IMG/VR virus record: IMGVR_UViG_3300009370_001221 | Span: 1 to 64,000 of that record | Direction: 5' to 3' (one strand) | DNA: 64,000 nt | Shown: positions 5,499 to 61,251 of the stretch, piece by piece | Layout of the letters: each line of letters opens with the position of its first letter | Numbering within the stretch: position 1 is the stretch's first letter | The notes under the pieces: generated by a model | The model's input: only the letters and a program-made list of their open reading frames with translations | What the model was told of the DNA's origin: nothing | Databases searched by the model: none | Translations under genes and position numbers: made by a program

Positions 5499-5802
5499 AA
5501 CAGCAAAAAAACAGTTACTAACAGTTGCTACTAAAAATGACGTACCATACGTCCGCTATTCACTTGATGGCGGCGGGTGCTCAGGCTTAATTGGCAAATG
5601 GGAAAATTCTGACGAGTTAGAAGATGGTGATATTACTTTTGATTTAGGTGAGAGTAAACAATTCCTCATTGATAAATTTACAATTACACATATGACTGGT
5701 GCAACAATTGATTATACTGGTGATTTTATGCCAGCATTTAAAGTTACCATCCCAGATACTGCATCTTGTGGGTGTGGTGAATCCTTTATGATGAAGGGTT
5801 AG
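5473..5802 (+). CDS. iscA: A-type Fe-S cluster carrier (IscA/SufA/HesB family)
   Basis: GGGCSG and SCGCGESF signature motifs. Confidence 0.92.
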   Translation: MEHNIILTETAKKQLLTVATKNDVPYVRYSLDGGGCSGLIGKWENSDELEDGDITFDLGESKQFLIDKFTITHMTGATIDYTGDFMPAFKVTIPDTASCGCGESFMMKG

Positions 5803-6433
5803 TAATAAAGTTGTAAATATCTTTCCAATTTTTAGCAACTAAAGCAGGGCCTGGATAATCCATATTATGACCATGTTCCATTAGTATACCACGCAACCCC
5901 ATTTTTTCGCCAGTATCTACATTTTTCATTTTATCTTCTATCCACCAGCATCCTGAGTCCCTATAAGGTTCTAATGCGTCATCTTTATCAACGCCAGTAT
6001 CTAAACAAACTACTTTTTCAAATGCGGTTTCACCAAACAATTTGGCTAAATTCTGTTCTCTTAAACGTATCGCGTGTCTATTCAAACTTAATGATGTAAT
6101 TGCGTGAAATGCGTAACCATGTTGCTCATGTAATTTTTTTACATAAAACATAGCATCTCGTAATGGGGGGAGGAAACCTATTGAAGCACTCTCATTAAAA
6201 AACTCTGTTAATTTTTTAGCATTTGTACCAGTTATACCAAAACGCTTTGCTACGCTATAAACTAGTTTATGCCCATCTTCTGCTGTGTGTCCGTGCTCTT
6301 CCATCCACGTATGAAACGCGAATTCCCAGTCTAGCAAGACACCATCAACATCGGTTAATATGATTCTATCTTTCTTCATTGTTGAGTGACTTGTGAGTAG
6401 TGTTGCCAAAGAATTTACTTCTAAGGTAACCAT
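5786..6433 (-). CDS. HAD-superfamily hydrolase (5'-nucleotidase-like, T4 30.2-like)
   Basis: DVDGVLLD motif I and WIEDK motif; may start at MKKDRI (6379). Confidence 0.8.
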   Translation of the reverse strand: MVTLEVNSLATLLTSHSTMKKDRIILTDVDGVLLDWEFAFHTWMEEHGHTAEDGHKLVYSVAKRFGITGTNAKKLTEFFNESASIGFLPPLRDAMFYVKKLHEQHGYAFHAITSLSLNRHAIRLREQNLAKLFGETAFEKVVCLDTGVDKDDALEPYRDSGCWWIEDKMKNVDTGEKMGLRGILMEHGHNMDYPGPALVAKNWKDIYNFITNPSS

Positions 6434-8148: not shown

Positions 8149-8165
8149 ATTTACATTATAAACGT

Positions 8166-10087: not shown

Positions 10088-10734
10088 AATTAACAAACGA
10101 TAAACATTTTTATATACCAGAAGAAGATCATTGTGGTTGGCGTTGGAGTGCTAATTACGAATTTAATCCTTACTTATCTACAATAAAACAAATTGTTAAT
10201 AAGAATATAGCTTTAGATATTGGTGCTCATGTAGGCATTTGGTCCAAAAGACTTGCCTATGAATTTACAAAAGTGATAGCATTTGAACCAATACCACAAC
10301 ATATAGAATGTTGGGAAACAAATGTATTAGAAAAGAATGCAAGTTTAAACAAAGTGGCAATTTCTGACAGGGCAGGCACAGCAACTATGAAATATATAAA
10401 TTATTTCACTGGTATGTCTACCTTACACTATAATGCTGAAGAAATGGAAATAGAATTTAAAAAACTTACAAAGAAAAAAGTTATACAGACTCCAAAAGAT
10501 ATATCTGTTAACACTAAAACAATAGATAGTTATGATTTTCATAATGTGGATTTTATTAAAATGGATGTGGAAAGTCACGAATTAGAGGCATTAAAAGGTG
10601 CAGAGAAAACAATAAGAAAATTTAAACCACCAATTTACATTGAGATAGTAAATAAGGATGCCTACATTTTTTTAACAGAATTAGGATATAGACAAAAGGA
10701 AGATTTTGGTAACGATCATTATCTATTTAACTAA
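10084..10734 (+). CDS. FkbM-family methyltransferase
   Basis: LDIGAHVG, AFEP and FIKMDVESHELEALKGA motifs. Confidence 0.9.
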   Translation: MKLTNDKHFYIPEEDHCGWRWSANYEFNPYLSTIKQIVNKNIALDIGAHVGIWSKRLAYEFTKVIAFEPIPQHIECWETNVLEKNASLNKVAISDRAGTATMKYINYFTGMSTLHYNAEEMEIEFKKLTKKKVIQTPKDISVNTKTIDSYDFHNVDFIKMDVESHELEALKGAEKTIRKFKPPIYIEIVNKDAYIFLTELGYRQKEDFGNDHYLFN

Positions 10735-10812
10735 TACCAAGAATTGGTACCATATATCAATAATAAAGTAAATAAAATTAGTTGATATCAATTACAACAA
10801 GGAGTTAAATCA

Positions 10813-11583
10813 ATGAAAAAAGTTATAGTAGCACTATCTATGCTTTTAACTTCTTTTTCAGCTACAGCAGATGACAGTTATACAATCGTAAATGCTGGTA
10901 GCGACTCAGGAGATTTTAAAGCAGTATTGTCAATGATTGGCAATCAAGTTGATAGTAAATTTATACAGGCCAATAATCCTGTAGTTGCGGCCAGTCATTT
11001 TAATAATAAAAATGTACTTACTATGTGGAGTACAGAGTGGCCAGGCGATTCATCTATGCCATCAGTAGAAATGAATGAAAATACAATTATCGGTATTATG
11101 ACATATGAAACAATAATGTGTTCTCGCACTTTTACTTCAATGTCAGACATGTCTGGTAAAACAATTAAAATAGCAACATGGGGGAAATCACCCCCTGTTA
11201 AAAAATTCCTTGATAGGGTAGGAAAAGACAATAATATAAATTTTGTTATTGTTCCTTATGACGGAAGTGGTGCAACTACCAGAGGTTATCTAGGAAACGA
11301 CACTGATACTATTTTTACAACTCAAACTAAACAAGCTAAAGTAGAAGCGGATGGTAAATGCTTTGCATTTAGTGCAAATGGAGATTTAGATTTTGCATTT
11401 GTTGATGTTATTGTATCTATCAACGCATCTAAAACTGCCGTAAACAATGCTCGAAGTGTTGTTGCTAAACTAGTACAATCAGAAGCATGGGAAACTGCAT
11501 TTGGTGGAACTATGACATATATAATTAATAGTGGTGCTATAACTTCTAAAGTTAATAGTGCTATTAGTAATTTTTCAAATTAA
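10813..11583 (+). CDS. Periplasmic substrate-binding protein (TctC/Bug-like)
   Basis: Signal peptide; IVPYDGSGATTRGYLGNDTD resembles the TctC VPYxGxxxAxxxxLGGxxD motif; same operon as TctA. Confidence 0.65.
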   Translation: MKKVIVALSMLLTSFSATADDSYTIVNAGSDSGDFKAVLSMIGNQVDSKFIQANNPVVAASHFNNKNVLTMWSTEWPGDSSMPSVEMNENTIIGIMTYETIMCSRTFTSMSDMSGKTIKIATWGKSPPVKKFLDRVGKDNNINFVIVPYDGSGATTRGYLGNDTDTIFTTQTKQAKVEADGKCFAFSANGDLDFAFVDVIVSINASKTAVNNARSVVAKLVQSEAWETAFGGTMTYIINSGAITSKVNSAISNFSN

Positions 11584-12815
11584 TTTTCATATATAATACA
11601 CGCCTGTAACTGTTCTGAAATGGATCTATGTTTACTATCTAAACTAGATCCATTTTTTTCATCTGTTGACAACATAATCTCAATCCCTTTTGGTATATAC
11701 ATATTTTCAGGCAACGTATAACCAGGTTTTAATTGATGCAAACTTGTATCTCTTATATAAGGTTTTAAATGAGATATATCACTAATACTTTTAATTTTTC
11801 CTGGTTTTATATTAGCAATAGTCCATAGAAAATGTTTCCTTAAAGGAATAAACTTATCTTGTAATATAGATGAAAACAATTCATTATCATGTATTTGATC
11901 CATAAAAGATATACCACCACCAGGACGAGGATTTAAATCAATTATTTTTATATTACCATCATACATATAAAAGTCTGGGCCAGAAAATATCATATCTTTT
12001 ATTTCTAATGAAGTAACAAATGTACTTAAAAAATGTTTAGCAATTTCTACTAATTTAATAGGTACTTCATTTTCATTAATACTACGATGCGAAATAACTT
12101 GATTATCTTCTAACTTTATTGATAACCAAAATATTATTTCAGGAATACCTTTTTTCGTAATACGAGTATAAAGTCCAAACACTTGTGTACTAATCGATAA
12201 ACATTCTTGTGCCATTAAATGATATCTTATATTATTGAAATCTGGATGGGCAAATCCTTGTTTATTATCTTTAAAAAATGTTGGCCCTAACTCTTTCATA
12301 AAACTATTTTTATTTTTAAAACTTGTATATTCATAATCTTTATAAGGAGTTAAACATCTCATACCTGATCCAACAGTAGGTTTAACAAATATTCCTTTAT
12401 CTTTAAATATATCTAAATCTTCATGACATACAGGTATAACACTATCTGGTATAAGTTCTCCAAACCCTATTTCTTTACAATGATTATCAAACTTTTGTTT
12501 ATCAGACAACACTTGTGCTGTTTCATAATATAAATTACTTAACCCATAATATTGCTCAAGTTTGCATTGTAATGGCAACAGATCTTCAGTAAGACTGTAA
12601 ACTACATCTACTTCTTTTACATCTAATAGAATTTGTTTAATATCATATGTCGAGTTTATAAACAACTCCGCCCTATATATTTCAAAACTTTCAATTTGAT
12701 CTGGCCAATAATGATCTGACACAAGAAATACTCTATGATTTAAAAGTTTTAACCCTTTAATCATACCAGTACATTTATTCCAACCTCTACTATGGCACAA
12801 TAATAATATGTTCAT
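11580..12815 (-). CDS. ATP-grasp fold ligase
   Basis: DKQKF, FVKPTVGSG and IDLNPRPGG motifs. Confidence 0.8.
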   Translation of the reverse strand: MNILLLCHSRGWNKCTGMIKGLKLLNHRVFLVSDHYWPDQIESFEIYRAELFINSTYDIKQILLDVKEVDVVYSLTEDLLPLQCKLEQYYGLSNLYYETAQVLSDKQKFDNHCKEIGFGELIPDSVIPVCHEDLDIFKDKGIFVKPTVGSGMRCLTPYKDYEYTSFKNKNSFMKELGPTFFKDNKQGFAHPDFNNIRYHLMAQECLSISTQVFGLYTRITKKGIPEIIFWLSIKLEDNQVISHRSINENEVPIKLVEIAKHFLSTFVTSLEIKDMIFSGPDFYMYDGNIKIIDLNPRPGGGISFMDQIHDNELFSSILQDKFIPLRKHFLWTIANIKPGKIKSISDISHLKPYIRDTSLHQLKPGYTLPENMYIPKGIEIMLSTDEKNGSSLDSKHRSISEQLQACIIYEN

Positions 12816-13549
12816 ATAGTAATTTTTATTTTATACTGTTTTTGATATAATTTTTCTTTTAATTCATTAGTTACATCTATATAGTTTTCAATATTAGAAT
12901 TTGTAAATAACTCTTCTAAAAATTTAAAATCATTAACGTCTTGAAGACTAATTTTATTATCTATAGCATATAAAAAGCCAAGTCTTGCTCCAAACGCACA
13001 AGATTTTCCATTTTTTACTTCTCGTTTTATACACCATGAAAGTGTATAATTTATTCTAGGTTCACCAAACAACGAATGTGTTTTAAATGCTTCTCTAAAC
13101 CCTGCACAAAATGCTTGATATGTAGAACTATTAATGACAGTTTCACCAACACAAACATTTCCATCAGTTTGTTCAATATTATCACATCTATACCATTCTA
13201 AATTTTTATTAAAGTTATCTTTTGTTATATAGTTAAATGTATTTTTAGTCCAACATTTTATAGATCCACTTGCATCTGTAGCACCTAATATACTATTTTT
13301 TGTAGGATATCTAATTAATTGATTATCATTAGTAAAATTAAACTCTATATCTTTTAAATTATCCCAAACCACTGTATCACCATCTACAGTAATAAAGCAA
13401 TCAGACTCATTTAATTTAGATGCTTTATAATATGCCTCATAAATCCCTCTTACTCCATGAACCCTTTTAGCATGAGGAAATTTACTTAACAAATCTTGAT
13501 AATTTACTTCAGCATTGGGTTCTTTATAAGAAATGAAAATAATATCCAA
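12812..13549 (-). CDS. Glycosyltransferase-like protein (GT-A fold)
   Basis: DIIFISYKEPNA...AKRVHGVRGI...TVDGD (DxD) and AGFREA. Confidence 0.65.
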   Translation of the reverse strand: MDIIFISYKEPNAEVNYQDLLSKFPHAKRVHGVRGIYEAYYKASKLNESDCFITVDGDTVVWDNLKDIEFNFTNDNQLIRYPTKNSILGATDASGSIKCWTKNTFNYITKDNFNKNLEWYRCDNIEQTDGNVCVGETVINSSTYQAFCAGFREAFKTHSLFGEPRINYTLSWCIKREVKNGKSCAFGARLGFLYAIDNKISLQDVNDFKFLEELFTNSNIENYIDVTNELKEKLYQKQYKIKITI

Positions 13550-13550
13550 T

Positions 13551-14159
13551 TCATTTTCTACCTATTAACATATAACGAGTATATCCTGCAACATTAATAT
13601 CCAACTCCCCACCGTATAAGAGATTACTTATATAACATTGTTGTTTAAATTCCTCTAAACTATCAACACAATTAACATGTTCTTCTAATTCATTAAAATT
13701 ATTACTTTGCAATACTAATAATTTGTTATCTGGAATATTATCATACCAATCACTAAAGTTTTTTATATGTTCACAGGATGTATTAATAATAGTATCACAC
13801 TTATTGTAGTCTAAATTATGTATATCTTCTGTTATTGCCATAAACCTATTAACGTATTTGAAAGAATTCATATCATTTGCTATTTGGGTGCAAAATGAAT
13901 CTATGTCATACGAATAAATTCTAATAATAGGAAGTTTACTAATAAACAGCATAGAAGCCAATTGGCCATACCAACCACCACATATATACACAATGCCTAA
14001 ATCCACATCCCAGTGTAGTAATTTATCAACAAGCCATGATTTACTTTCTAACTGTCCTTTACTAAAAACATTTTCCCAATTAGCATTTGGATACTTGCTT
14101 GTTAATTTATCTATACTATGCGATCGTAGCGTATTTGTCAAGGTTTCGTTCGAATTCAT
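13551..14159 (-). CDS. SAM-dependent methyltransferase-like protein
   Basis: ICGGWYG motif I, SYDID and INTSCEH. Confidence 0.7.
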   Translation of the reverse strand: MNSNETLTNTLRSHSIDKLTSKYPNANWENVFSKGQLESKSWLVDKLLHWDVDLGIVYICGGWYGQLASMLFISKLPIIRIYSYDIDSFCTQIANDMNSFKYVNRFMAITEDIHNLDYNKCDTIINTSCEHIKNFSDWYDNIPDNKLLVLQSNNFNELEEHVNCVDSLEEFKQQCYISNLLYGGELDINVAGYTRYMLIGRK

Positions 14160-43699: not shown

Positions 43700-44536
43700 T
43701 TAAGCATCAAAGGCTGGATTTGGATCGGTACCGTATTTTTTATACCACTCTACTGTGCCATATTTAGGTTTAGATACTTGTGCCACTGGCTCATCTCGCC
43801 GAGGTTCAGGTGCGTCTACACCTTGTGTTTTTTGTTTTGGTATTGGTGTAGCATAGTCTTGTTTTTGTTTGTATAACTCCATTTTATCAATGATATCTTG
43901 TTGATATTGTAATCCAGCATCTCCTTTAGGAGTTGGACCAGCATTATACATTCGTGATGCTTGATCATCTGTTTTTGCACCATATTTTTCTTTTTGTAAT
44001 TTCCAATATACTCCAGCAACTCTTATATTATCTTCAGGATCATGTAAATCTACTTTTCGACCAAGATACTTTTCTACATCTTTTCTTGCTAATTCTCTAA
44101 TTTGTCCTATACCAATTGCAGTACCTTTATCACCTGTAAGTGTTTTTCCAGTTTTATCATCTGTATGATTAAAACTTGATTCTTGATGTAAATGAGCAGC
44201 TAATCTCGCATATGGAATACCAAGTTCTTTTGCAATTTTAGCAATGCGTTCTTTATATATTTTATATGACCTAGGAATTTCTGAAGATTCAGTTAAAGGC
44301 ATTCTAACTTTTATATTAGATTCATTTATTTGGGTATTACGAACAAAAGCAATTTCACCTTCTCTTTTAACACGCTTAAATACAGACTTATTAACCAACC
44401 CATTAGCAGTATGAACTTCTCGTTCTGTTAAATCTTTTTTGTATATCGGCTCATTGGAATAAGAAAGTAAAAACTCACTTTCCACAAGACTAATATAAAC
44501 TAATGCTGTTAAACCTGCTACTTGTGCAAATCTCAT
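43700..44536 (-). CDS. Lytic transglycosylase (SLT) domain protein
   Basis: HQESSF, AIGIGQI, DPEDNIRVAGVY and YNAGP. Confidence 0.85.
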   Translation of the reverse strand: MRFAQVAGLTALVYISLVESEFLLSYSNEPIYKKDLTEREVHTANGLVNKSVFKRVKREGEIAFVRNTQINESNIKVRMPLTESSEIPRSYKIYKERIAKIAKELGIPYARLAAHLHQESSFNHTDDKTGKTLTGDKGTAIGIGQIRELARKDVEKYLGRKVDLHDPEDNIRVAGVYWKLQKEKYGAKTDDQASRMYNAGPTPKGDAGLQYQQDIIDKMELYKQKQDYATPIPKQKTQGVDAPEPRRDEPVAQVSKPKYGTVEWYKKYGTDPNPAFDA

Positions 44537-45051
44537 CGTATGTCCAGTGGAATCCCTTGCCGTTTCATTTTTCTTACAAGTTGTGCCTGCTCTGCTGGAC
44601 TACGCTCTATTTCAAGTGCAATGCCATTAGGACTCATAGTCACAAAATAATCTTTCCAACTTATTATTTTAGGACGTTTTGCTATATTATTTGGATCTGA
44701 AACATATAACCGGCCACTTCTTATTAAATTAGCTTGCGATTGTGCTATCCCTAATTGTAATAATTGTTCATCAGGTGTTATAATATATATTGTAGGATTT
44801 GCAGGCCATGGTTGCTCACGTATAGATATAGGATTACCAATTTGTCCTATTAAACCTAATGCTAATTTTGCTTCATCTGCTTCGGAAGGTTCAGTTGTCA
44901 TTTCACCAGTATCTGGATCAATACGCATATCACGCCCAGTACTATCTAAATCAACAGAAGTATCAACACCAGGTTGACCATGCAATTCAATATCATGTCC
45001 TGATACGCCTTTAATACTTAATGGTGCTTCAAATAATTCTGCTAATTTCAT
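44533..45051 (-). CDS. Hypothetical protein
   Basis: MKLAELFEA N-terminus. Confidence 0.6.
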   Translation of the reverse strand: MKLAELFEAPLSIKGVSGHDIELHGQPGVDTSVDLDSTGRDMRIDPDTGEMTTEPSEADEAKLALGLIGQIGNPISIREQPWPANPTIYIITPDEQLLQLGIAQSQANLIRSGRLYVSDPNNIAKRPKIISWKDYFVTMSPNGIALEIERSPAEQAQLVRKMKRQGIPLDIR

Positions 45052-50345: not shown

Positions 50346-51761
50346 TTATATTTCATCAGGAGTATTCATGTTGCGTAATAATGATCTTATCTTACTTCCA
50401 CTTGCTTCAGCAGTTACTTTTGGAGTATCCTCGTTAGGTTGCACTGTAGCACTTCTGTTTATTCTATCAAATATGTTAGTTGATTGTGTTTGTGTTGCTG
50501 TATAAGAAGTATCTTCCTCTTGTTGCCCTTCTTCTCCCAAATCTCTTATACGCAAACTGCTTATATCAAATTCTAAATCTACTTTTGAGCCAACCCCACT
50601 ACTGCTTCTTGTTTTCATAAACTGCACTTGATAACGTCCACGTTCACGCATTGCCCTACTCGTAAAAATACCAATAACATTATCTGCTGTATTAATTTTA
50701 CTAATACCACCTGCAATGTGACTATGATCAAACTCTATTTCATCAACTGCACTTCTGTTTAACTGCGATGCTGTAACAAATACAACATCTAACTCTTTAG
50801 ATAAGTTACGCAATTCTTCTGCAACATATTTGTCTTTAACATATAAATCACTTGGTGCAACTTTTGTGCTAATTGGCATACACAAATCTAAATAATCTAC
50901 TAACACCACATCTGCTTTCATACCTTTTTGCACATTTAATTCTTTAACATAACTTCTAAAATCATTAATATTACTTTGTGCTGGCATATATTTTATTTGT
51001 AAATTGCCTGCTTTTTTACTTACAAGTTTAATTTTCATTTCAACAGTATCCAAATCTTTAAATATTTCCTTTGTAGAAATATTGGACACCATACTATCAA
51101 TTCTCATTGCAGTTAATTCCTCACTCAACTCCAATGTAAAATATAATACATTGAGTCCTGCAAGCACCCAATTAACTGCTAAATTTTGCATAAACAAACT
51201 TTTACCACTACCACTACCACCTGCAAATATTTGTAACTCACCTCTATTAAATCCACCAAACAATTTTCTATCAAACATTTCCCAACCAGTGCTAACTTGC
51301 CCATTACTTGTTTTTAATGTCATTAAACGTTCGCGTGGATTGTCCCAATAATCAGTTCCCATGTCTTTTGTAAGACCAACCTGTACAGCATCTTTAATTT
51401 TGGCCTCTACTAAACCATAATCACCTTTCTCTAACAAATCCGCACTGTCTAATATTGCACGTTCTAGTTCTTTATGCCTACTAAACTGTTCAAACTCATC
51501 TAATAACCAATTACTGTGTTCTTCTAACTGCTCAGTCACAACATCTTGTAATTTGGAACCTGTTTTGCTGTTTATTTGATTTACTTCTGGCAATGTTTTG
51601 TATTGATCTACATAATTTAATACAAATGTTGCTATTGGCCGCAAACTTCTATCAAAATTCTGCGGATTGAATATATTTTGCACTCTAACAAATGCTTCTG
51701 GATTGCTTACTAGCATTTCCAAATATAATTTCTGCAATTCTACGTTATATTCTTTATTCAT
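50346..51761 (-). CDS. DnaB-like replicative helicase (T4 gp41-like)
   Basis: GGSGSGKS Walker A, TLELSE, VDYLDL, TASQLNR and KTRSSSGVG. Confidence 0.93.
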   Translation of the reverse strand: MNKEYNVELQKLYLEMLVSNPEAFVRVQNIFNPQNFDRSLRPIATFVLNYVDQYKTLPEVNQINSKTGSKLQDVVTEQLEEHSNWLLDEFEQFSRHKELERAILDSADLLEKGDYGLVEAKIKDAVQVGLTKDMGTDYWDNPRERLMTLKTSNGQVSTGWEMFDRKLFGGFNRGELQIFAGGSGSGKSLFMQNLAVNWVLAGLNVLYFTLELSEELTAMRIDSMVSNISTKEIFKDLDTVEMKIKLVSKKAGNLQIKYMPAQSNINDFRSYVKELNVQKGMKADVVLVDYLDLCMPISTKVAPSDLYVKDKYVAEELRNLSKELDVVFVTASQLNRSAVDEIEFDHSHIAGGISKINTADNVIGIFTSRAMRERGRYQVQFMKTRSSSGVGSKVDLEFDISSLRIRDLGEEGQQEEDTSYTATQTQSTNIFDRINRSATVQPNEDTPKVTAEASGSKIRSLLRNMNTPDEI

Positions 51762-51774
51762 ATACTGTAATTAT

Positions 51775-52746
51775 CTATGTTTGTAAACGTTTTTGGTGTA
51801 ATTGAATTTTTAACCGTGTGGACTGAACATTATCCAATATATTCTTTAATGTAAACATTTTGCCGTAATTTAATACTGCTTCATTTATATCTTTGCAAGT
51901 ATCATACCAAGTTGGGAAACTAACATCCCAATTGTACTTCATTGCTTGTGTTATAAGTTTATTACCAGCACTATCATTATCTGGCACCATTATTACTTGC
52001 CTATTTAGACTTTCTATCAAGTCTACTTGTGCATCACCAATATCACTACCTAATATTGCAACTCCATCTATAGCAATTGCATCAAATGGGCCTTCTGTCA
52101 CAATAACAAACTTACGATCTTCAGTTTGCCTGTCCATATTAAACACATAACCCGCAGGCGTACTAGTAAAATATTTTGGATTACCACGAACTGCTAATCG
52201 TGCCGTGTATCCTACTATTTCATCTTGCCAAAAGAATGGAATTATTACTCGTCTATCAAATTTTGTCTCTGTAATTGGTGTCCAGTAATATGGATAATCA
52301 TTTTCATCCAATCCACGCTTATGTAAATATTCTAATATAAGTTTATTATCAGATGCTAATGGACTACTTTGTTCCGGAAAATCTTTCTTCTCAAAAGTAA
52401 ATTCAATTTCCTCTGGAATTAAGTTTTGCTCAATTGCTGTCTCTTTTAATTGTATAGCAGTTAATACAAGACGCTTTATGTCAGATTCCGGAGTACCAAG
52501 CCAATCCATAAATTGTCGCAGTTTACGACTTAATGGCCTACCTGGTTGCCACCCTGTTTTATATCCACAATTAAAACAATTATACGATATTGCCTCTCCA
52601 TTAAGTATAATACCGCCTCTACCACGTTTGTCTTGCGTTTCTCCGTTATGAACACAACATGGAGCATTAAAGGACTGCCAGCCACTGGAACTTTTCTTTA
52701 CCTTTCCTGGTAAATTACTCATAATGACTGACTGTATTTGATTCAT
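51775..52746 (-). CDS. DNA primase (T4 gp61-like; zinc finger plus TOPRIM)
   Basis: CC..H / CFNC zinc finger, VTEGPFDA, PDND and KDINEA. Confidence 0.9.
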   Translation of the reverse strand: MNQIQSVIMSNLPGKVKKSSSGWQSFNAPCCVHNGETQDKRGRGGIILNGEAISYNCFNCGYKTGWQPGRPLSRKLRQFMDWLGTPESDIKRLVLTAIQLKETAIEQNLIPEEIEFTFEKKDFPEQSSPLASDNKLILEYLHKRGLDENDYPYYWTPITETKFDRRVIIPFFWQDEIVGYTARLAVRGNPKYFTSTPAGYVFNMDRQTEDRKFVIVTEGPFDAIAIDGVAILGSDIGDAQVDLIESLNRQVIMVPDNDSAGNKLITQAMKYNWDVSFPTWYDTCKDINEAVLNYGKMFTLKNILDNVQSTRLKIQLHQKRLQT

Positions 52747-53583: not shown

Positions 53584-53958
53584 ATGCCGAACATATATGA
53601 AGAGTTAACAGAAAAGTACCCTTTCATCAGTTATATCAAATATGCTGATAGGGAGATAGTAGGTATTATCCTCAATAAAGATGCAACCATTGTAAGCATT
53701 TACGACTTTAATGAGTTGCCGAACACAGAAGCAAAACAAAAATTTCTAGATCTGGGAGAAACATGGTGGTGGGAATCAAATAGAATGTTTCCTATAAACA
53801 TATTTCTTAAACAAGAATTTGCTATCTTCAAACCATTTATCAAAACATTTATGGCTAAAGATGTTGAAATAGTTCATGGTCCATATGTTAGTATGAATGA
53901 ATTAGCACAACGCCGGACCAAACGCAGGAATATACAACTAGTCCAAAAAGTTAAGTAA
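53584..53958 (+). CDS. Conserved hypothetical phage protein
   Basis: KYPFIS...VGII.N...WWWESNRMFPINIFL. Confidence 0.65.
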   Translation: MPNIYEELTEKYPFISYIKYADREIVGIILNKDATIVSIYDFNELPNTEAKQKFLDLGETWWWESNRMFPINIFLKQEFAIFKPFIKTFMAKDVEIVHGPYVSMNELAQRRTKRRNIQLVQKVK

Positions 53959-54516
53959 ATGATAGATACCTCTGCTGTAGTTAAAAGAGAAAATATATCC
54001 ACTAGAATATCGTGTCAAACCAAAAATTTTAGTTTTCATTATGAATATTATGTCTATCCAAAACTTCGTATCTATTATTGTAATATACCAAAATGTGCTT
54101 CTACTGCTTTAATGAAGTTCATTAGCAACAAAAATACAATACAAAAAAATCCACGATATTTCACAGTAGTTCGTGAGCCATTGAGTAGATTTAAATCATC
54201 TTTAAATTATCTTGATATGTTTTTTAGCGACTACGTAAAAAATAATTATAGTGGAGGTGTGAAAGACCAAATGGCACATCGGCTTCTGCATTTAATGCCA
54301 CAATCTTTTTTCATTAAATACTTTCCTTATACTATTAAAGAATTTTTTCATATGGGAAATGTTGATAAGATATTTAATGAAGAAGTTATCAGAAAGAATG
54401 CTAACGAATATAGTGATAAATTCAATATTGACTTTGATAATACGCTTAAAAATTATAAAAATTGGTTCGAGGACGTATATCAAAAAGATATAGAATTATA
54501 CAATAAGGTTAAGTAA
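53959..54516 (+). CDS. Sulfotransferase family 2-like protein
   Basis: IPKCAST and VVREPLSRFKS PAPS-binding motifs; HLMPQ. Confidence 0.75.
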   Translation: MIDTSAVVKRENISTRISCQTKNFSFHYEYYVYPKLRIYYCNIPKCASTALMKFISNKNTIQKNPRYFTVVREPLSRFKSSLNYLDMFFSDYVKNNYSGGVKDQMAHRLLHLMPQSFFIKYFPYTIKEFFHMGNVDKIFNEEVIRKNANEYSDKFNIDFDNTLKNYKNWFEDVYQKDIELYNKVK

Positions 54517-55068
54517 ATTCATATGCACAACTACTAAATGTGCATAAGCAACCGCGTGTGACTTCTTAAAATAATATCCTTCATCAGGCTTCTCCCACAC
54601 TTGCTCACCAATCTCTTTCCATGTTTTACCAATCAAATAACGCTTTGCTGGACGAATTACAGACAGAAACATTGCCATCCGCGGAATAGTATCTGGCTTC
54701 ATTTTTTTAATAAGATCATATTGATTGCCTACATGAATTAATTGCTCACAATATTCTTTTTCTAATAATCTTTCCCATGGTGGTTCTGTAAACATTAAAT
54801 CAATTAAATGTGCTTCACTTTTAACTTGACTATACACGTTTACATTAAGCAAATCTAATTTAAAATAACCACGGTCTTCCGCATCTTTATGATCAAGAGA
54901 ACAAATTCCTTTTACTGGATCAGTTGGAACATCGGTAAAGTATACTCCAGTATTATGTTTCACTAATTCATTTCCCCTAATAATAGTCGCAGGAATATGA
55001 TGCTTTACTTTTTCCAGCACAGCAGTTCTATCTGCAAAATCTATATCAATATCAAACTTAAGGCTCAT
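54496..55068 (-). CDS. Miniature DNA polymerase III alpha (DnaE)-like protein
   Basis: DIDIDF, KHNTGVY, FKLDLL, IRP and YYFKKSHAVAYA motifs in 190 aa. Confidence 0.8.
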   Translation of the reverse strand: MSLKFDIDIDFADRTAVLEKVKHHIPATIIRGNELVKHNTGVYFTDVPTDPVKGICSLDHKDAEDRGYFKLDLLNVNVYSQVKSEAHLIDLMFTEPPWERLLEKEYCEQLIHVGNQYDLIKKMKPDTIPRMAMFLSVIRPAKRYLIGKTWKEIGEQVWEKPDEGYYFKKSHAVAYAHLVVVHMNLLNLIV

Positions 55069-55765
55069 ATTGGTGTCTTGCCCTTGGTACAATCGGTAAT
55101 GCTAAAAATCCTAAACGTGGCATTGGCAAATTTCCACCAGCATCGTCAAATGCTTCTATATATACATAACCATGTTTAAAATATGTTTTTTTATAATAAC
55201 TTGAATCTTCCCACCACACTATTAATTCTTTATGCTTATCTATCGGATCTGGATTGGATCGTAAGTGTACTTCTATAATATTATCATCAATACACTCTAC
55301 ATTTATACTACTTACATCTTTTAGTTCATCAAACCAGTCTGGAAGTTTAATAAACCTATTTCTCTTAACCCATTTACTCCATCTCCACAACTTTTCTTCT
55401 CCTGTTTCCCTAAAACCTTCCCAACAATTTAATTGTCGCCAACCTTTTGCATAACGAGGAGTTCTTAATGGAACTTCCCATTCTTCTTCCCATATGAAAT
55501 CATATGAGAAATGCCTCCCTTCAAACTTTTCACACCAAAAATGGCCCGGCGGCAGAGTAGTATATTCATCTGGGTCCATCTCTACAGTTTCAGCACCTAC
55601 GCCCATACCTTCTAAATTCATAATAGGACGTACAATGTATTCTTCTTTAAGTAATACATTTACACCAGCCGGGCCACATCTATAGCCTAATTTTTCACTT
55701 AACCATAACTTGTTATACCATTTATGGTGATGTGGATATTTGTCATAGGCAACTGCGTCATCCAA
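55058..55765 (-). CDS. Conserved marine-phage protein, possibly ATP-grasp-like
   Basis: NKLWLS..LGYRCGP, IVRPIMNL.GMG, FWCEKFEG and IIEVHLR. Confidence 0.5.
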   Translation of the reverse strand: MDDAVAYDKYPHHHKWYNKLWLSEKLGYRCGPAGVNVLLKEEYIVRPIMNLEGMGVGAETVEMDPDEYTTLPPGHFWCEKFEGRHFSYDFIWEEEWEVPLRTPRYAKGWRQLNCWEGFRETGEEKLWRWSKWVKRNRFIKLPDWFDELKDVSSINVECIDDNIIEVHLRSNPDPIDKHKELIVWWEDSSYYKKTYFKHGYVYIEAFDDAGGNLPMPRLGFLALPIVPRARHQYEP

Positions 55766-55966: not shown

Positions 55967-56668
55967 TTACATTTTTGCGTCACTTAAAATATGCTTAACC
56001 CATTCTACATCGCTTACAAACGCTTCAAAACGTTTGCTCCAATATATTGGGTCTATAAAATCGTTAATCAATCCTAATTGTTCATCAGTCATTTTCTCTA
56101 ACATCTCCATACCTGTTTTACAATTATAGATTGTCCATGGACTTATTTTTCCATTTCTAATTAATGATACTGCTTTATTGAAACTTACAAACTTAAAGAA
56201 ATGATTGAATTGGGCATTATTGTCTGTTGCCCATTTTTCCATAGTTATAATACTGCGTTCTAATGCATCACGAACATTTTCAGTTTTAATATATGGCAAC
56301 AAATACTCTTCATATATTGCATCTTTACACCAATGATCCAATTTTTTATTTGCTTTTATAACATAGTCTATAAAATAGTCTGGATTTATTACGTTAATAT
56401 TAATAATGTGATTACCAAATTTTACAAAAGCATTATAATATTGACTTTGTGCAAAGTGCTCATATGTTTTAAAATTTGAACTCCCTTGTGTTAACTCATA
56501 GAACCGTTTATAAGCAATGTACGCAATTTGCACATGCTTTTCATCTCTTTGTTGATGCCTACGCTTGGGCTCACATACGTGCGCCGCTAGTGTTTTCTCT
56601 CTTGTAAAACTCCTTTTACAAAATTGGCACTCATAGTTTTTCTCTGATTGACTTATCGTCGTATCCAT
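55967..56668 (-). CDS. Zinc-finger-containing phage replication-region protein
   Basis: CQFC..F.....L..H.C N-terminus; GKISPW. Confidence 0.6.
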   Translation of the reverse strand: MDTTISQSEKNYECQFCKRSFTREKTLAAHVCEPKRRHQQRDEKHVQIAYIAYKRFYELTQGSSNFKTYEHFAQSQYYNAFVKFGNHIININVINPDYFIDYVIKANKKLDHWCKDAIYEEYLLPYIKTENVRDALERSIITMEKWATDNNAQFNHFFKFVSFNKAVSLIRNGKISPWTIYNCKTGMEMLEKMTDEQLGLINDFIDPIYWSKRFEAFVSDVEWVKHILSDAKM

Positions 56669-57101: not shown

Positions 57102-57720
57102 TTCTTTCTCTAACGTGCATATGAAAATTATTTGTGAATACTTCTGATATGTATTCTTCTATTTTAACATGTTTCATGTATTTGTCAAGTTCAAACGGAA
57201 TATCATCAGCAATGCGTCTAATAAGTCCTATAGGATATTTCTCATTAAACCGATTACTAATCGCTTTTAAATTAAATGCATCCACAATATACCCACTCGC
57301 TGGCCTTGCTTCTGGCATATAACTAGGTGAGTTTTTATATACGTTATTAGTTAAACCATCTGGTGAGCCTAGATCAAACCCTATTAAATCTATTTCACAG
57401 TGATCCCGCATTGCTATTTGTAATGCCATACATCCAGCACTCATCATTGGCTCATACTCAGGCATATCCTCTACAAAATAAACATGCTTTGGCATACCAT
57501 AAAATGTTCTACCTTCAGGTATATTTGTAGTACGTCCTTTAAGATGAGTATTATACTCAAACTCTGTACGCATTGCTTCATCAATTATAACTAAATGATC
57601 CGCGGAAAAATCCCTATATAGTCCATTACAACCATATATTTCCCACTTGTCACGTCTAAATAAATTTAAACCAATTCGTTTACGACTCTCGCCGTTTCCT
57701 ACTACTAATGCTTTCTTCAT
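57091..57720 (-). CDS. DUF115/MAF-like Rossmann protein (sialyltransferase-like)
   Basis: VVGNGESR, YGCNGLYRD, SAG and IDLIGFD. Confidence 0.6.
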   Translation of the reverse strand: MKKALVVGNGESRKRIGLNLFRRDKWEIYGCNGLYRDFSADHLVIIDEAMRTEFEYNTHLKGRTTNIPEGRTFYGMPKHVYFVEDMPEYEPMMSAGCMALQIAMRDHCEIDLIGFDLGSPDGLTNNVYKNSPSYMPEARPASGYIVDAFNLKAISNRFNEKYPIGLIRRIADDIPFELDKYMKHVKIEEYISEVFTNNFHMHVRERNAK

Positions 57721-58220
57721 TACATTACTTGGTTAACATCTATTACCTCTGATTGTTTATTAATTTCGCTTACAAAATATGCACATTGGGGTTTTGGATT
57801 ATCGTTTAATGGTATTGCTAATAATTGTCCTGTTTTAAGTTTTGGAAAATACCATTTAACTTCTGTATAGATATCTACAATATCAATTTCTCTATACTCA
57901 TGCATATATCCACTCAAACAATTATATAAAAATGCTTCAAAACCTCTATCATTTACACTTGTTAAGGGCAAAACTTCCAAATCACCCACTTCAGGACTTC
58001 CCACTACAATATGCCAATCAACTGGCATCATTATTTTATCTTTCCCCAATTGAATTACTAGTGCTGGCGCATTAAAACTCTCTAAAAATATTAAGGGAAT
58101 AAAAAAGTAATCTGGGTCCTGTGGATTACTATTGTCCAATATACAAAAACGAACATCATCTACCTTTTCAGGCATTTCGTTCATAGCAAACGACTTATTA
58201 TCTAATGTTAAAATTCTCAA
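57720..58220 (-). CDS. Conserved hypothetical phage protein
   Basis: DYFFIPLIFLESF and KWYFPKLK; beta-rich. Confidence 0.6.
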   Translation of the reverse strand: MRILTLDNKSFAMNEMPEKVDDVRFCILDNSNPQDPDYFFIPLIFLESFNAPALVIQLGKDKIMMPVDWHIVVGSPEVGDLEVLPLTSVNDRGFEAFLYNCLSGYMHEYREIDIVDIYTEVKWYFPKLKTGQLLAIPLNDNPKPQCAYFVSEINKQSEVIDVNQVM

Positions 58221-58865: not shown

Positions 58866-60314
58866 CTACTGCCAGTTAATTTTATCTACTGTAAATGGAT
58901 ATTCTGCCTCCCTATAAAATCTTTTCCTTTTTGTTAAGTGGCGTTTTGCAAACTTACAAGTACTCGTTATATCCCATATTTGTACAAAGTCCTTATCTTC
59001 TGCTTTACGGACGCCACGCCCGATGCTCTGTATAACCCGCACAAAACTCTTACCTGGTTCTATTAACACAAGATTGAATATTCGTGGGATGTTAATTCCA
59101 ACTGCCGCAACACCATACGTTGCTATAATAATTTTTGCTTCTGCTGTACGTATTTCATCATAATGCTCTTTACGCTCATCTGCTTTTGTAGCACCACTAA
59201 TGAATACACTATCCTTTAATTTTAATTGTATTGCTTTGCCAGCACTAATTCTATCTACGAGTATAAGTGTATTGCCACTCTCTTTAACATCGTTTAAAAA
59301 CTCGCCTATATACGATACTCTATCCTCGTTGGTGAGCAAATACTTTAACTCGCTTTGATAGTTATTATACTCACCATAATCCTGTAACTGCACGATATTC
59401 ACGTGACAGTTTGCCAGAACGCCCTTCTCCTGCAAATCGACAGCGGCCACCCTATTGACTACTTCCCCTATGCTAACACGCAGTGACATCCATTCGAATT
59501 GCTCCTTAGGTATAGTTCCAGTTAATCCCCAACGTATAGGCACGTGGGACAACTGCTGAGTCAATAACTGCTTGAGCACGTCTGCCTTACTCTGATGTAC
59601 CTCATCCACTATCACACAGCAAACGTCCTCTATAAAGTCTCCAAACGTTATATCCACTTGAGCATTGCGAGTACGCTTCATCAGTATGTTAAGGGATTGC
59701 CAAGTACAAATAGTATGAGTGCGACCAAACTCTTTTCTATCTCCATAGAACACGCCCACATCTAATCCCAGATTAATGTAGTCTTCTTCTGTTTGCGTCA
59801 CTAAACTTTTATTAGGTACTATAACTATAGTCCGGCCATATACTTCACACTTATGGCTGAGTATTGCTGTAACAAGTGTCTTACCAGCACCTGTAGCAAC
59901 TTCTTGTATAGCATGTGGGGATTGTAAAAAGTTATTAATAACTTCTACTTGATAATCTCGCAATACAATAGGTTGCCCTTCATGCGTATGCTTTTTTGGC
60001 CACTTGACATGACTGTAACTAACTTCAGTTACTGGTTCAAATGCTAAATCAACTGGCTTGCGATAATCTATTAAATCAATTTTATAATTAGAAATGTCAT
60101 CTAATATATCTGGCAAGAGGTTGATAAACGTGCTACCACCTAATTGAAAGAAACTTACTTTGCCATCCCAACGCCCTAAACGAACCGCTGGCATAAATCG
60201 CGCATGTGGGATATCGAATTTAAACTTATTAGATAACTTTCGTCTATCTGTTAAATCTAAACCCTCAAATTTGCAATTTACTTCATCTTTTAAATATAAT
60301 TTACACTTTGGCAT
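58866..60314 (-). CDS. uvsW: UvsW-like SF2 DNA helicase
   Basis: LRDYQ, ATGAGKT, VDEVH, GLTGT and QSIGRGVR; GRWDGKVSFF N-terminus. Confidence 0.9.
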   Translation of the reverse strand: MPKCKLYLKDEVNCKFEGLDLTDRRKLSNKFKFDIPHARFMPAVRLGRWDGKVSFFQLGGSTFINLLPDILDDISNYKIDLIDYRKPVDLAFEPVTEVSYSHVKWPKKHTHEGQPIVLRDYQVEVINNFLQSPHAIQEVATGAGKTLVTAILSHKCEVYGRTIVIVPNKSLVTQTEEDYINLGLDVGVFYGDRKEFGRTHTICTWQSLNILMKRTRNAQVDITFGDFIEDVCCVIVDEVHQSKADVLKQLLTQQLSHVPIRWGLTGTIPKEQFEWMSLRVSIGEVVNRVAAVDLQEKGVLANCHVNIVQLQDYGEYNNYQSELKYLLTNEDRVSYIGEFLNDVKESGNTLILVDRISAGKAIQLKLKDSVFISGATKADERKEHYDEIRTAEAKIIIATYGVAAVGINIPRIFNLVLIEPGKSFVRVIQSIGRGVRKAEDKDFVQIWDITSTCKFAKRHLTKRKRFYREAEYPFTVDKINWQ

Positions 60315-61251
60315 AGTAATTCTGACCAGGCCCAACCATTCCTTCCTTTGATTTTATATTACTATAATAACATACTTTGGGTATTTGGTCAATTAAAATG
60401 TTAAAACTATTCTCATTTACCATTCGTGTAAAGAATATCAATTGTGGTTTAATGTTACTCTGTATCAATGTTTGTATTGAATAACTGTAGTAAACATCAC
60501 AATTAGACTTCATTTTGTGGTTAGGTGGTACTAATACTACACCAATTTTACTTTTGTCTATTAATCTATTAACTACTTTGGTTACTAATTCACTATAGTG
60601 TCCTAAATTAGGATCTTGACTATTATCTGGCTTGTAGAATACTATAGGTGTTCTCTTATACTTTAAGGCATATTGTATAATTTGCTCAAGTTTAGAGCGT
60701 TCATTTTTACTGCCAGTAAACAATGTCACATATTGATTATTGAGCATTGTATGCTCTACTGAATCATTTAACAAGTTTAAAACGTTACTACTTAATCCAT
60801 AACATAACTCGATAGATTTGTCTATTAATTGCCATACATTAATAATTTCATTTTGTTTAAGATATTCTATCAATTCATCACTGGCATTTTTCATAATTGG
60901 TTTGCCATTAACAAAATCTAACTGAATAAGATGATTGTGAATTTCTGATTGTACTTTTTCTATCTCATCTAAATAATAATAAACATCATCATCAAAAATA
61001 ACATCTTCTTGCATATCATTATTACGCAAATAATTAGCAATAAAAAGTAAATTGAGTTCGCTTAAACTAAAAATCCATGAATTTTCTGCTGAATCATAAT
61101 AAACATTTTGTGCCGCTTCTTTAACATGATCAAAAAATTGCTGTGATATTTTTTGAACATACGCAGTACCCCATTGCTCTAAATCGAACTCAGGTATCTT
61201 CACATGAATACTATCGTTTTCTATAGAAACTTTCCAGCAATTATAATTCAT
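60301..61251 (-). CDS. Hypothetical protein
   Basis: Long ORF; start placed downstream of the terminator. Confidence 0.55.
   Translation of the reverse strand: MNYNCWKVSIENDSIHVKIPEFDLEQWGTAYVQKISQQFFDHVKEAAQNVYYDSAENSWIFSLSELNLLFIANYLRNNDMQEDVIFDDDVYYYLDEIEKVQSEIHNHLIQLDFVNGKPIMKNASDELIEYLKQNEIINVWQLIDKSIELCYGLSSNVLNLLNDSVEHTMLNNQYVTLFTGSKNERSKLEQIIQYALKYKRTPIVFYKPDNSQDPNLGHYSELVTKVVNRLIDKSKIGVVLVPPNHKMKSNCDVYYSYSIQTLIQSNIKPQLIFFTRMVNENSFNILIDQIPKVCYYSNIKSKEGMVGPGQNYYAKV

What the first reader, a model, noticed from the sequence alone, without database searches (positions are those of the whole stretch)
54496..55068. 190-aa miniature DnaE-like polymerase
Seen: motifs normally spread over several hundred residues of Pol III alpha (DIDIDF, H..GV, K.D.L with the third Asp, RP, F.KSHA.AY) are collinear in 190 aa, with no PHP, OB or clamp-binding domains, near primase and helicase. 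Inference: an intact minimal nucleotidyltransferase (primer extension, repair or DNA modification) rather than a fragment. Similar small proteins may already be noted in jumbo phages; I do not know of a demonstrated function.
Basis: partly seen in the sequence, partly recalled or inferred. Interest (0 to 1): 0.6.

Follow-up and report, generated by a model that had tools for sequence, protein, structure and literature searches.

The report
Half of a split mini-DnaE polymerase
The 190-residue gene is real, intact and conserved, but it is only the C-terminal half of a two-gene "minimal DNA polymerase III alpha" that was already described in 2021 for this group of jumbo phages, and the other half is missing from this incomplete genome record.

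Summary
Its predicted structure (pLDDT 94.5) aligns over 186 residues with E. coli Pol III alpha 397-779, with Taq Pol III alpha and with PolC (Z 9.0-9.8; best unrelated match Z 3.6).

The protein starts at the DxD strand, so it lacks the first half of the nucleotidyltransferase core, including the GRGS NTP-binding motif. In complete relatives (G001, 121Q, Atu_ph07) that half is a separate gene of about 170 aa (PF07733, phrog_11127), 31-180 kb away beside the clamp loader. It ends exactly where this protein begins. The two halves occur in matching genus counts among cultured phages, and a fold of the pair scores 0.90 against 0.01 for controls.

Iyer et al. 2021 (Viruses 13:63) already described this split minimal Pol III alpha in group 2.2 jumbo phages. 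I found no biochemical study of it.

The N-terminal gene is absent from the 235-kb record. That record is a truncated fragment that also lacks the clamp loader, so a real loss cannot be told apart from an assembly gap.

Verdict: a known family; modest interest.

The parts
54496..55068 (-). C-terminal unit of the split minimal Pol III alpha (190 aa plus stop; P0001)
   Evidence: Translation. phrog_11778 'DNA polymerase', E 9e-63, profile positions 6-192 of 197. AF2 pLDDT 94.5. VIA-align Z 9.0-9.8 to DnaE/PolC, matching E. coli 397-779. pN 0.12 against pS 0.71 versus the closest relative.
55036..55053 (-). Codons for D6-F11 (DIDIDF), the metal-binding DxD strand; equivalent to E. coli D401, D403 and D405
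   Evidence: Invariant D6, D8 and D10 in alignment A1. E. coli positions taken from the fetched dnaE. In the fold of the pair, residues 9-11 pair with N-unit residues 135-138.
54943..54960 (-). Codons for K37-V42 (KHNTGV); equivalent to E. coli K510-H511-A-G-G-V
   Evidence: H38 and G41 invariant, K37 and T40 nearly invariant. The E. coli KHAGG motif starts at residue 510.
54841..54861 (-). Codons for K70-V76 (KLDLLNV), carrying the third catalytic Asp; equivalent to E. coli K553 and D555
   Evidence: K70, D72, L74, N75 and V76 invariant. Aligned to the E. coli KFDFLGL motif.
54649..54654 (-). Codons for R139-P140; equivalent to the E. coli RPGP motif (R639-P640)
   Evidence: Invariant. Local alignment.
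54541..54570 (-). Codons for F167-A176 (FKKSHAVAYA), the finger helix; equivalent to E. coli F756-A765 (NKSHS)
   Evidence: H171 and Y175 invariant, F167, K168 and A176 nearly invariant. Matches to phrog_405 positions 779-809 and phrog_12219 positions 363-398. Alignment.
53584..53958 (+). Context: conserved 124-aa gene (phrog_11637, unknown function) that converges on the C-unit gene
   Evidence: Lies on the opposite strand downstream of the C-unit in 72 IMG/VR loci, 49 of them directly adjacent; 73 loci had enough downstream sequence to test. Also found in 121Q, Atu_ph07, Phosso and G001. Invariant WWWESNR motif. No clear fold match, best Z 4.3.
55058..55765 (-). Context: upstream 235-aa ORF (phrog_3577, unknown function) whose stop overlaps the C-unit ATG by 11 nt
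   Evidence: No homologue in G001 passed blastp E 1e-3.
51775..52746 (-). Context: DNA primase
   Evidence: phrog_47, E 7e-43. The order C-unit, structural protein, primase, helicase is the same in 121Q, Phosso and Atu_ph07.
50346..51761 (-). Context: DnaB/gp41-like replicative helicase
   Evidence: PF03796, E 6e-22. Homologue of 121Q gene 20.
58866..60335 (-). Context: UvsW-like DEAD/DEAH helicase
   Evidence: PF04851, PF00270 and PF00271. Homologue of 121Q gene 10.
5786..6433 (-). Context: NT5C-like gene, the only member present here of the cluster that holds the N-terminal unit and the clamp loader in relatives
   Evidence: 58% identical to G001 325293-325892. PF06941, E 9e-4, 19.7 bits, below Pfam's 24.8-bit cut-off. 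In G001, 121Q and Atu_ph07 the N-unit lies 2-6 kb upstream of this gene.

Best explanation
The gene encodes the C-terminal subunit of the two-piece 'minimal DNA polymerase III alpha' of group 2.2 (Rak2/121Q/Atu_ph07-like) jumbo phages.

It supplies the three metal-binding aspartates (D6, D8, D72), the conserved lysine K70 and a much reduced finger region (RP and KSH motifs). It does not contain the first strand, the GRGS loop or the helix of the Pol-beta-like nucleotidyltransferase core. In relatives these come from a separately encoded ~170-aa N-terminal subunit.

The two proteins are inferred to assemble non-covalently by beta-sheet complementation. The N-unit strand just before GRGS lies against the C-unit DIDID strand, which rebuilds one active site. 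There is no room for a split intein: only 5 residues precede the DxD strand.

The heterodimer most likely performs short, poorly processive templated DNA synthesis (primer extension or gap repair) alongside the phage's family B replicase. This is suggested by the conserved position of the C-unit gene beside the primase-helicase genes and of the N-unit gene beside the clamp loader.

Shown here: homology, fold, residue conservation, the split, and the matching distribution of the two halves. Inferred: assembly of the halves, polymerase activity and the replisome role.

In this record the N-unit gene is not present, most probably because the contig is truncated in that region.
For: - Family: phrog_11778, E 9e-63 over the full length.
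- Fold: the top 16 Foldseek and top 13 VIA-align PDB hits are all C-family polymerases. Z 9.0-9.8, 181-187 residues aligned to E. coli 397-779, Taq 459-836 and PolC 968-1294; the next hit has Z 3.6.
- Conservation: at least 593 IMG/VR relatives; 75 complete ORFs of 183-208 aa; invariant catalytic residues; pN 0.12 against pS 0.71.
- N-unit in complete relatives: G001 331405-331920, 121Q 44233-44775 and Atu_ph07 240847-241380. PF07733 at 36.7 bits, above the 23.9 cut-off, matching profile positions 16-94. phrog_11127, E 3e-47; that profile also detects DnaE in 10 control bacteria.
- Distribution: the C-unit is in 96 phage records and the N-unit in 103, at least six of the latter being ordinary DnaE of other phages. 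Counts per genus match for Escherichia, Pseudomonas, Salmonella, Erwinia, Xanthomonas, Yersinia and Agrobacterium; Klebsiella is 11 against 10.
- Fold of the pair (G001 N-unit with the window's C-unit): ipSAE 0.90, best control 0.01. This mark was reached by 58 of 80 solved complexes and 2 of 110 mismatched pairs. Runs agree in at least 95% of contacts, partner pLDDT 90, and N 135-138 touches C 9-11.
- A family B polymerase is present in the same genome.
- The synteny with primase and helicase is conserved.
- Literature: Iyer et al. 2021, PMC7824862.
Against: - No N-unit was found in the 235-kb record by tblastn, a six-frame HMM search, PF07733 or phrog_11127.
- I found no biochemical data for either unit in the papers searched.
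- The fold of the pair may score high simply because the model remembers the intact DnaE fold. It also used an N-unit from another phage, whose own C-unit is 63% identical to the window's.
- The C-unit has no thumb, no clamp-binding motif and no proofreading domain, and no DnaQ-like gene is in the record. A replicative role is therefore speculative.
- Pfam and a HMMER profile search of PDB sequences do not detect the C-unit. The link to DnaE rests on structure prediction, weak PHROG matches and motifs.
Confidence: 0.72

Rival explanations
1. One reading: a stand-alone, complete miniature nucleotidyltransferase that works by itself.
For: All three catalytic Asp residues and the finger motifs lie in one small, well-folded protein. 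No N-unit is found in this record or in five other partial records.
Against: The protein starts at the DxD strand, so the GS-motif half of the Pol-beta-like core is missing. The N-unit family ends exactly at the junction, and the genus counts of the two families match in cultured phages. The fold of the pair supports binding, 0.90 against 0.01 for controls. The records without an N-unit are 13-67% complete.
Confidence: 0.06
2. This phage has truly lost the N-unit. The C-unit is then an orphan: a relic on its way out, or a protein re-used for a non-catalytic role such as DNA or replisome binding.
For: By gene order, the N-unit would be expected a few kb upstream of the NT5C-like gene at 5786-6433, but that stretch holds unrelated genes, several on the other strand.
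Against: All invariant residues are retained, with pN well below pS. The gp44-like clamp loader (phrog_168), a core replication gene conserved in all three complete relatives compared, is missing from the same cluster even though PolB is present. The left end of the contig cuts through an open frame and there is no terminal repeat. CheckV estimates 67% completeness. All of this points to an assembly gap rather than a gene loss.
Confidence: 0.07
3. The N+C heterodimer is a nucleotidyltransferase but not a templated DNA polymerase. It could, for example, add untemplated tails, modify DNA or make a nucleotide signal.
For: Pol-beta-fold enzymes carry out many different chemistries. The enzyme has lost the thumb, about half of the fingers and all processivity and proofreading modules. 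The phage already has a family B replicase.
Against: The finger motifs that are retained (RP, KSH-AAY) are specific to C-family DNA polymerases rather than to other Pol-beta-fold enzymes. These motifs and the K-x-D motif are invariant. The two genes sit in replication modules, beside primase-helicase and beside the clamp loader.
Confidence: 0.12
4. A pseudogene fragment of a full-length DnaE, or a chance ORF.
For: No Pfam match. It covers only about a sixth of the length of DnaE.
Against: Hundreds of homologues of 183-208 aa carry the invariant catalytic residues. Synonymous sites are saturated while pN is 0.12-0.26. The fold is predicted with high confidence.
Confidence: 0.01

Closest known systems
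Split minimal DNA polymerase III alpha of group 2.2 jumbo phages (Iyer, Anantharaman, Krishnan, Burroughs & Aravind 2021, Viruses 13:63); C-terminal unit = phrog_11778, N-terminal unit = phrog_11127
   Same: Same family (E 9e-63). Same length, same invariant residues, same kind of genome (T4-like core with family B polymerase) and same neighbourhood beside primase and helicase as in 121Q, Atu_ph07 and Phosso.
   Different: The partner N-terminal unit is not in the held record. This copy also has two lineage-specific neighbours: a 235-aa ORF that overlaps its start, and a 185-aa ORF inserted at its 3' end.
Bacterial DnaE / Pol III alpha (E. coli, Taq, M. tuberculosis DnaE1) and PolC
   Same: The second half of the palm and the core of the fingers. 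The DxD strand, H-x-x-G, K-x-D, RP and KSH-x-AY motifs are collinear. Structural Z is 9-10 over 186 residues.
   Different: 190 aa against about 1,160 aa. There is no PHP domain, no first half of the palm (GS motif), no thumb (E. coli ~432-510), about 100 residues of the fingers are deleted, and there are no beta-clamp-binding, OB or tau-binding parts. It is not detected by PF07733.
Mid-sized phage DnaE-like polymerases (phrog_11165, 782 positions; phrog_12219, 823 positions; phrog_405, 1190 positions)
   Same: Weak direct sequence matches (E 3e-4 to 1.4e-3) at the palm and finger motifs.
   Different: Those are single-chain enzymes that contain the N-terminal half of the palm.
Intein-split DnaE of cyanobacteria
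   Same: A C-family polymerase encoded by two distant genes.
   Different: From general knowledge: there the halves are joined by a split intein, and the split lies at a different site. Here the N-unit ends and the C-unit starts at the native junction with no intein sequence (5 residues before DxD). Assembly must therefore be non-covalent, and the split runs through the catalytic beta-sheet.

Membership tests
C-terminal unit of the split minimal Pol III alpha (phrog_11778) | Full-length profile match | tested here: met
   E 9.3e-63, residues 4-187 against profile positions 6-192 of 197
C-terminal unit of the split minimal Pol III alpha (phrog_11778) | Three catalytic acidic residues (DxD strand plus the third Asp) and the K-x-D, RP and KSH motifs conserved | tested here: met
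   D6, D8, D10, K70, D72, R139, P140 and H171 invariant in 32 sequences that include the window's
C-terminal unit of the split minimal Pol III alpha (phrog_11778) | Fold equals the second half of the DnaE palm plus reduced fingers | tested here: met
   VIA-align Z 9.0-9.8, 181-187 residues aligned, E. coli 397-779
C-terminal unit of the split minimal Pol III alpha (phrog_11778) | Host genome is a group 2.2 jumbo phage with a family B DNA polymerase and T4-like replication genes | tested here: met
   PF00136 at 220230-221438, 124.5 bits. 56 ORFs shared with G001, 121Q and Atu_ph07, including primase, gp41-like helicase, UvsW, UvsX and UvsY.
C-terminal unit of the split minimal Pol III alpha (phrog_11778) | A separately encoded N-terminal NTP-binding unit (PF07733 / phrog_11127) in the same genome | tested here: inconclusive
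   Not found in the 235-kb record. However, the record is estimated 67% complete, is cut at its left end, and lacks the whole cluster including the clamp loader. The unit is present in G001 (97% complete), 121Q, Atu_ph07 and Phosso.
C-terminal unit of the split minimal Pol III alpha (phrog_11778) | Physical assembly with the N-unit and polymerase activity | not testable with these tools
   Only a predicted complex is available: ipSAE 0.90 against a best control of 0.01. I found no assay in the papers searched.
Canonical C-family DNA polymerase (DnaE/PolC) | Match to Pfam DNA_pol3_alpha (PF07733), including the GS-motif half of the palm | tested here: not met
   No Pfam family at E <= 10. The protein starts at the equivalent of E. 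coli residue ~397.
Canonical C-family DNA polymerase (DnaE/PolC) | PHP domain, thumb, beta-clamp-binding motif and OB domain | tested here: not met
   190 aa. The aligned region ends at E. coli 779 and skips about 197 residues of E. coli 397-779, which include the thumb. The local sequence alignment shows the gaps.
Complete Pol-beta-like nucleotidyltransferase domain | hG[GS] NTP-binding motif upstream of the DxD strand in the same chain | tested here: not met
   Only 5 residues precede D6. The GRGS motif lies in the separate N-unit of relatives, at residues 139-142.

The most novel reading that the evidence does not exclude
The two-piece enzyme is a dedicated primer-extension polymerase of the jumbo-phage replisome. 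It would be a functional analogue of Pol alpha or of B. subtilis DnaE. Its halves are encoded in different replication modules, the C-unit beside primase-helicase and the N-unit beside the clamp loader, and come together only at the fork, possibly with the conserved convergent 124-aa protein (phrog_11637) as a third part. It would then be the smallest working C-family polymerase and a model for the ancestral core of the family.
Probability: 0.2. Interest if true: 0.6.

Novelty: already known. Interest (0 to 1): 0.27.

Why it matters
The family is the smallest known relative of the bacterial replicase, and it is split through its catalytic sheet. That makes it a useful natural system for asking what the minimal C-family polymerase core is and what a second polymerase does in a phage that already has a family B replicase.

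That point was made in print in 2021, and this window adds no new kind of object. What this analysis adds:
- The family is far more widespread in IMG/VR than in cultured phages (at least 593 loci).
- Length and catalytic residues are strictly conserved.
- The junction between the two halves was mapped to the residue.
- A controlled fold of the pair supports assembly through pairing of the N-unit strand before GRGS with the DxD strand.
- The N-unit gene travels with the clamp loader and the C-unit gene with the primase-helicase genes.
- The C-unit gene has a nearly universal convergent partner gene of unknown function.

Tried and rejected
Searches on the C-unit that found nothing:
- Pfam: no family even at E 10.
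- phmmer and a HMMER profile of 32 homologues against PDB sequences: nothing relevant.

Searches for the N-unit in the window's own genome, all negative:
- PF07733, phrog_405, phrog_11165 and phrog_12219 genome scans hit only the C-unit itself or nothing.
- A GS-motif regex on the genome's ORFs.
- phmmer with E. coli DnaE residues 271-400.
- tblastn with three N-units.
- A six-frame search with an HMM of 13 N-units.
- phrog_11127.
- The N-unit was finally found in relatives by running the regex on their ORFs.

Attempts to go beyond the record:
- The look-up of encoding contigs with the ORF nearest the left end, to extend the contig: nothing on record.
- Five other partial IMG/VR records that carry the C-unit (13-54% complete) have no N-unit. 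This is uninformative because the two genes lie far apart.

Other dead ends:
- The upstream overlapping ORF (55058-55765) was considered as the missing N-half and rejected. It belongs to phrog_3577, has no Pfam match and no GS motif, and has no detectable homologue in G001.
- The conserved 124-aa convergent neighbour was folded (pLDDT 79). No convincing fold match: best Z 4.3, with small beta-barrel (Sm/SH3-like) hits at Z ~3 only.
- No DnaQ-like exonuclease in the record.
- No supplementary tables were held for Iyer et al.. Other jumbo-phage papers gave no functional data.

Not used, because family scans and locus searches had settled the identity: the large protein searches (search for homologous proteins, the search of protein representatives) and the reads tools.

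Full report
**The object.** Window 54496-55068 (-) is an open frame of 190 codons plus a stop. A TTG eight codons upstream would give 198 aa. In 75 complete homologues, however, the protein starts 4-5 residues before the DIDID motif, so the ATG at 55068 is the likely start. That ATG lies inside the last codons of an upstream 235-aa ORF (55058-55765; phrog_3577, unknown function), an overlap of 11 nt.

- DIDIDF at 6-11, equivalent to E. coli DnaE D401/D403/D405
- KHNTGV at 37-42, equivalent to K510-H511-A-G-G-V
- KLDLLNV at 70-76, equivalent to K553/D555
- RP at 139-140, equivalent to R639-P640
- FKKSHAVAYA at 167-176, equivalent to N757-K758-S759-H760

The E. coli positions come from the dnaE gene fetched from the K-12 genome and a local alignment.

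**Sequence searches.** Pfam finds nothing, and HMMER searches against PDB sequences find nothing relevant, with a single sequence or with a profile. PHROGs places the protein over its full length in phrog_11778, 'DNA polymerase' (E 9e-63). It also gives weak matches to single-chain DnaE-like phage families: phrog_11165, phrog_405 and phrog_12219.

**Structure.** An AlphaFold2 model built on 32 homologues is confident (pLDDT 94.5).
- In Foldseek against the PDB, the first 16 hits are all C-family polymerases.
- VIA-align gives Z 9.0-9.8 with 181-187 of 190 residues aligned. The matched ranges are E. coli alpha 397-779, Taq alpha 459-836 and PolC 968-1294. The best unrelated hit has Z 3.6.
- The protein is therefore the stretch of DnaE from the DxD strand to the KSH helix, with about half of that stretch deleted, including the thumb and part of the fingers.

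**It is a conserved gene, not a fragment.**
- A scan of IMG/VR found at least 593 relatives.
- In the 80 loci kept, 75 complete ORFs measure 183-208 aa.
- D6, D8, D10, R14, H38, G41, K70, D72, R139, P140, K142, H171 and Y175 are invariant.
- Against the closest relative pN is 0.12 and pS 0.71. Against more distant relatives synonymous sites are saturated and pN is 0.23-0.26.
- Among cultured phages, 96 records hold it, and all 40 listed are jumbo phages of 94-490 kb: 121Q, PBECO4, GAP32, RaK2, PA5oct, Atu_ph07, Phosso, XacN1, RsoM2USA.

**It is only half of the catalytic domain.** The protein starts at the equivalent of E. coli residue ~397. It therefore lacks the strand, the GRGS loop and the helix that form the NTP-binding half of the Pol-beta-like core (E. 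coli GRGS at 361-364).

Iyer et al. [quoted passage not shown] I fetched three relatives in full: G001, an IMG/VR genome of 338.5 kb that is 97% complete, plus 121Q and Atu_ph07. The N-unit was found in each:
- G001 331405-331920 (-)
- 121Q 44233-44775 (+), gene 56
- Atu_ph07 240847-241380 (-)

Each is 171-180 aa and ends with an invariant W-G-V-G-R-G-S-S...Y-Y-D-L-D-I-T-x-F-L stretch. That stretch aligns with E. coli ...GPGRGSGAGS...FDLLFERFL, the segment immediately before PDFDVDF. The N-unit passes Pfam PF07733 (36.7 bits; cut-off 23.9; profile positions 16-94 of 260). It belongs to phrog_11127 (E 3e-47), a profile that also detects DnaE in ten control bacteria. The N-unit ends and the C-unit begins at one and the same point of the DnaE sequence, with no intein-like extra sequence.

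**The two halves go together.** The N-unit is found in 103 phage records and the C-unit in 96. At least six of the N-unit hits are ordinary DnaE genes of Clostridium, Thomasclavelia and Alishewanella phages. Counts per genus match: Escherichia 34/34, Pseudomonas 11/11, Salmonella 8/8, Erwinia 8/8, Xanthomonas 4/4, Yersinia 4/4, Agrobacterium 2/2. Klebsiella is the one difference, at 11 for the C-unit against 10 for the N-unit. Many GenBank records already call one or both 'DNA polymerase III alpha' or 'DnaE-like'.

A controlled fold of the pair, using the G001 N-unit and the window's C-unit, supports binding but does not show it:
- Score 0.90, best of three controls 0.01. This mark was reached by 58 of 80 solved complexes and by 2 of 110 mismatched pairs.
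- The runs agree in at least 95% of contacts, and the partner's pLDDT is 90.
- The most confident contacts put N-unit residues 135-138 (the strand before GRGS) against C-unit residues 9-11 (the DIDID strand). This is sheet complementation across the split.
- Caveats: the model may be recalling the intact DnaE fold; my own alignments were used; the N-unit comes from a relative.

**Genomic context.** The gene order around the C-unit is conserved in 121Q, Phosso, Atu_ph07, G001 and this window: UvsW-like helicase, four or five small conserved genes, the C-unit, a convergent 124-aa gene, a virion structural protein, the primase and the gp41/DnaB-like helicase.

In the three complete relatives the N-unit lies one or two genes upstream of a gp44-like clamp loader (phrog_168) and an NT5C-like gene. 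It is 31 kb from the C-unit in 121Q and about 100-180 kb away in G001 and Atu_ph07. The window's genome has a family B polymerase at 219801-222452.

**The missing partner.** No N-unit is detectable in the 235,363-bp record by any method. I do not read this as a loss, for four reasons:
- CheckV rates the record 67% complete and linear.
- An open frame runs off its left end, and the two ends share no repeat.
- Of 60 ORFs shared by G001, 121Q and Atu_ph07, the record has 52. Seven of the eight missing ones form one cluster in G001 (313.6-331.9 kb). This is the region onto which the record's two ends map. It contains the N-unit, the clamp loader, PhoH and a ClpB-like ATPase.
- A phage with a family B replicase but without the clamp loader that all three complete relatives carry is unlikely.

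One observation pulls the other way. The NT5C-like gene of that cluster is present at 5786-6433, and the stretch upstream of it, where the N-unit would be expected, holds unrelated genes. A rearrangement or a real loss therefore cannot be excluded.

**Function.** The fold, the motifs and the split are shown. Everything about activity is inferred. The retained motifs are those specific to C-family DNA polymerases, and both genes sit in replication modules. The most likely activity is therefore templated DNA synthesis by an N+C heterodimer. The loss of the thumb, the clamp-binding motif and any proofreading domain suggests short-patch synthesis, meaning primer extension or repair beside the family B replicase, as Iyer et al. 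also proposed. I found no experimental study of either protein.

**Verdict.** The family and its split architecture were published in 2021 and are represented in PHROGs and GenBank annotations, so the finding is already known. Interest is modest. It rests on the absence of any biochemical characterisation and on the open question of whether this phage really lacks the partner.

Noticed in passing
window 53584-53958 (+): A 124-aa protein (phrog_11637, unknown function) with an invariant WWWESNR motif. It converges on the C-unit gene in 72 IMG/VR loci, 49 of them directly adjacent (73 loci had enough downstream sequence to test), and in all four complete relatives. Model pLDDT 79; no clear fold match (best Z 4.3; weak Sm/SH3-like small-barrel hits). 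It could be a functional partner of the mini-polymerase or simply part of a rigid gene order.
   Followed up: partly
window 55058-55765 (-): A 235-aa ORF (phrog_3577, unknown function; no Pfam match) whose stop overlaps the C-unit start codon by 11 nt, which suggests coupled translation. It has no detectable homologue in the close relative G001, so it looks like a lineage-specific insertion.
   Followed up: partly
window 53959-54516 (+): A 185-aa ORF with no PHROG match, inserted between the conserved 124-aa gene and the 3' end of the C-unit gene, which it overlaps by 21 nt. By eye it has sulfotransferase-like motifs (PKCASTA..., REPLSRF). This was not tested against Pfam.
   Followed up: no
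G000 whole record (window = 1-64000); G001 313582-331920: The record lacks a conserved cluster present in G001, 121Q and Atu_ph07: the gp44-like clamp loader (phrog_168), the N-terminal Pol III unit, PhoH, a ClpB-like AAA+ ATPase and two small structural or morphogenesis proteins. It also lacks the RNR large subunit. Both contig ends map to this cluster, and an ORF runs off the left end (3-275, -).
   Followed up: yes
window 7849-11583 (+ strand block) and 8001-14000: A block of plus-strand ORFs with low GC (0.27-0.30) and reversed GC skew sits in an otherwise minus-strand region, just upstream of the NT5C-like gene, where relatives carry the clamp loader and the N-unit. It may be an inserted or swapped accessory module. 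The adjacent ORF 6955-7767 has a cytidylyltransferase-like N-terminal part (phrog_7878).
   Followed up: partly
window 55967-56668 (-) and 57720-58220 (-): Two proteins of unknown function that are conserved in all four genomes and always lie between the UvsW-like helicase and the C-unit. The first is phrog_11058, 233 aa, with a weak C2H2 zinc-finger match at residues 12-31. The second is phrog_11279, 166 aa.
   Followed up: no
121Q 8128-8946 (L088:808-1626): 121Q encodes a DnaQ-like 'DNA polymerase exonuclease subunit' seven genes upstream of its C-unit. No RNase_T/DnaQ-like gene was found in the window's genome record.
   Followed up: partly
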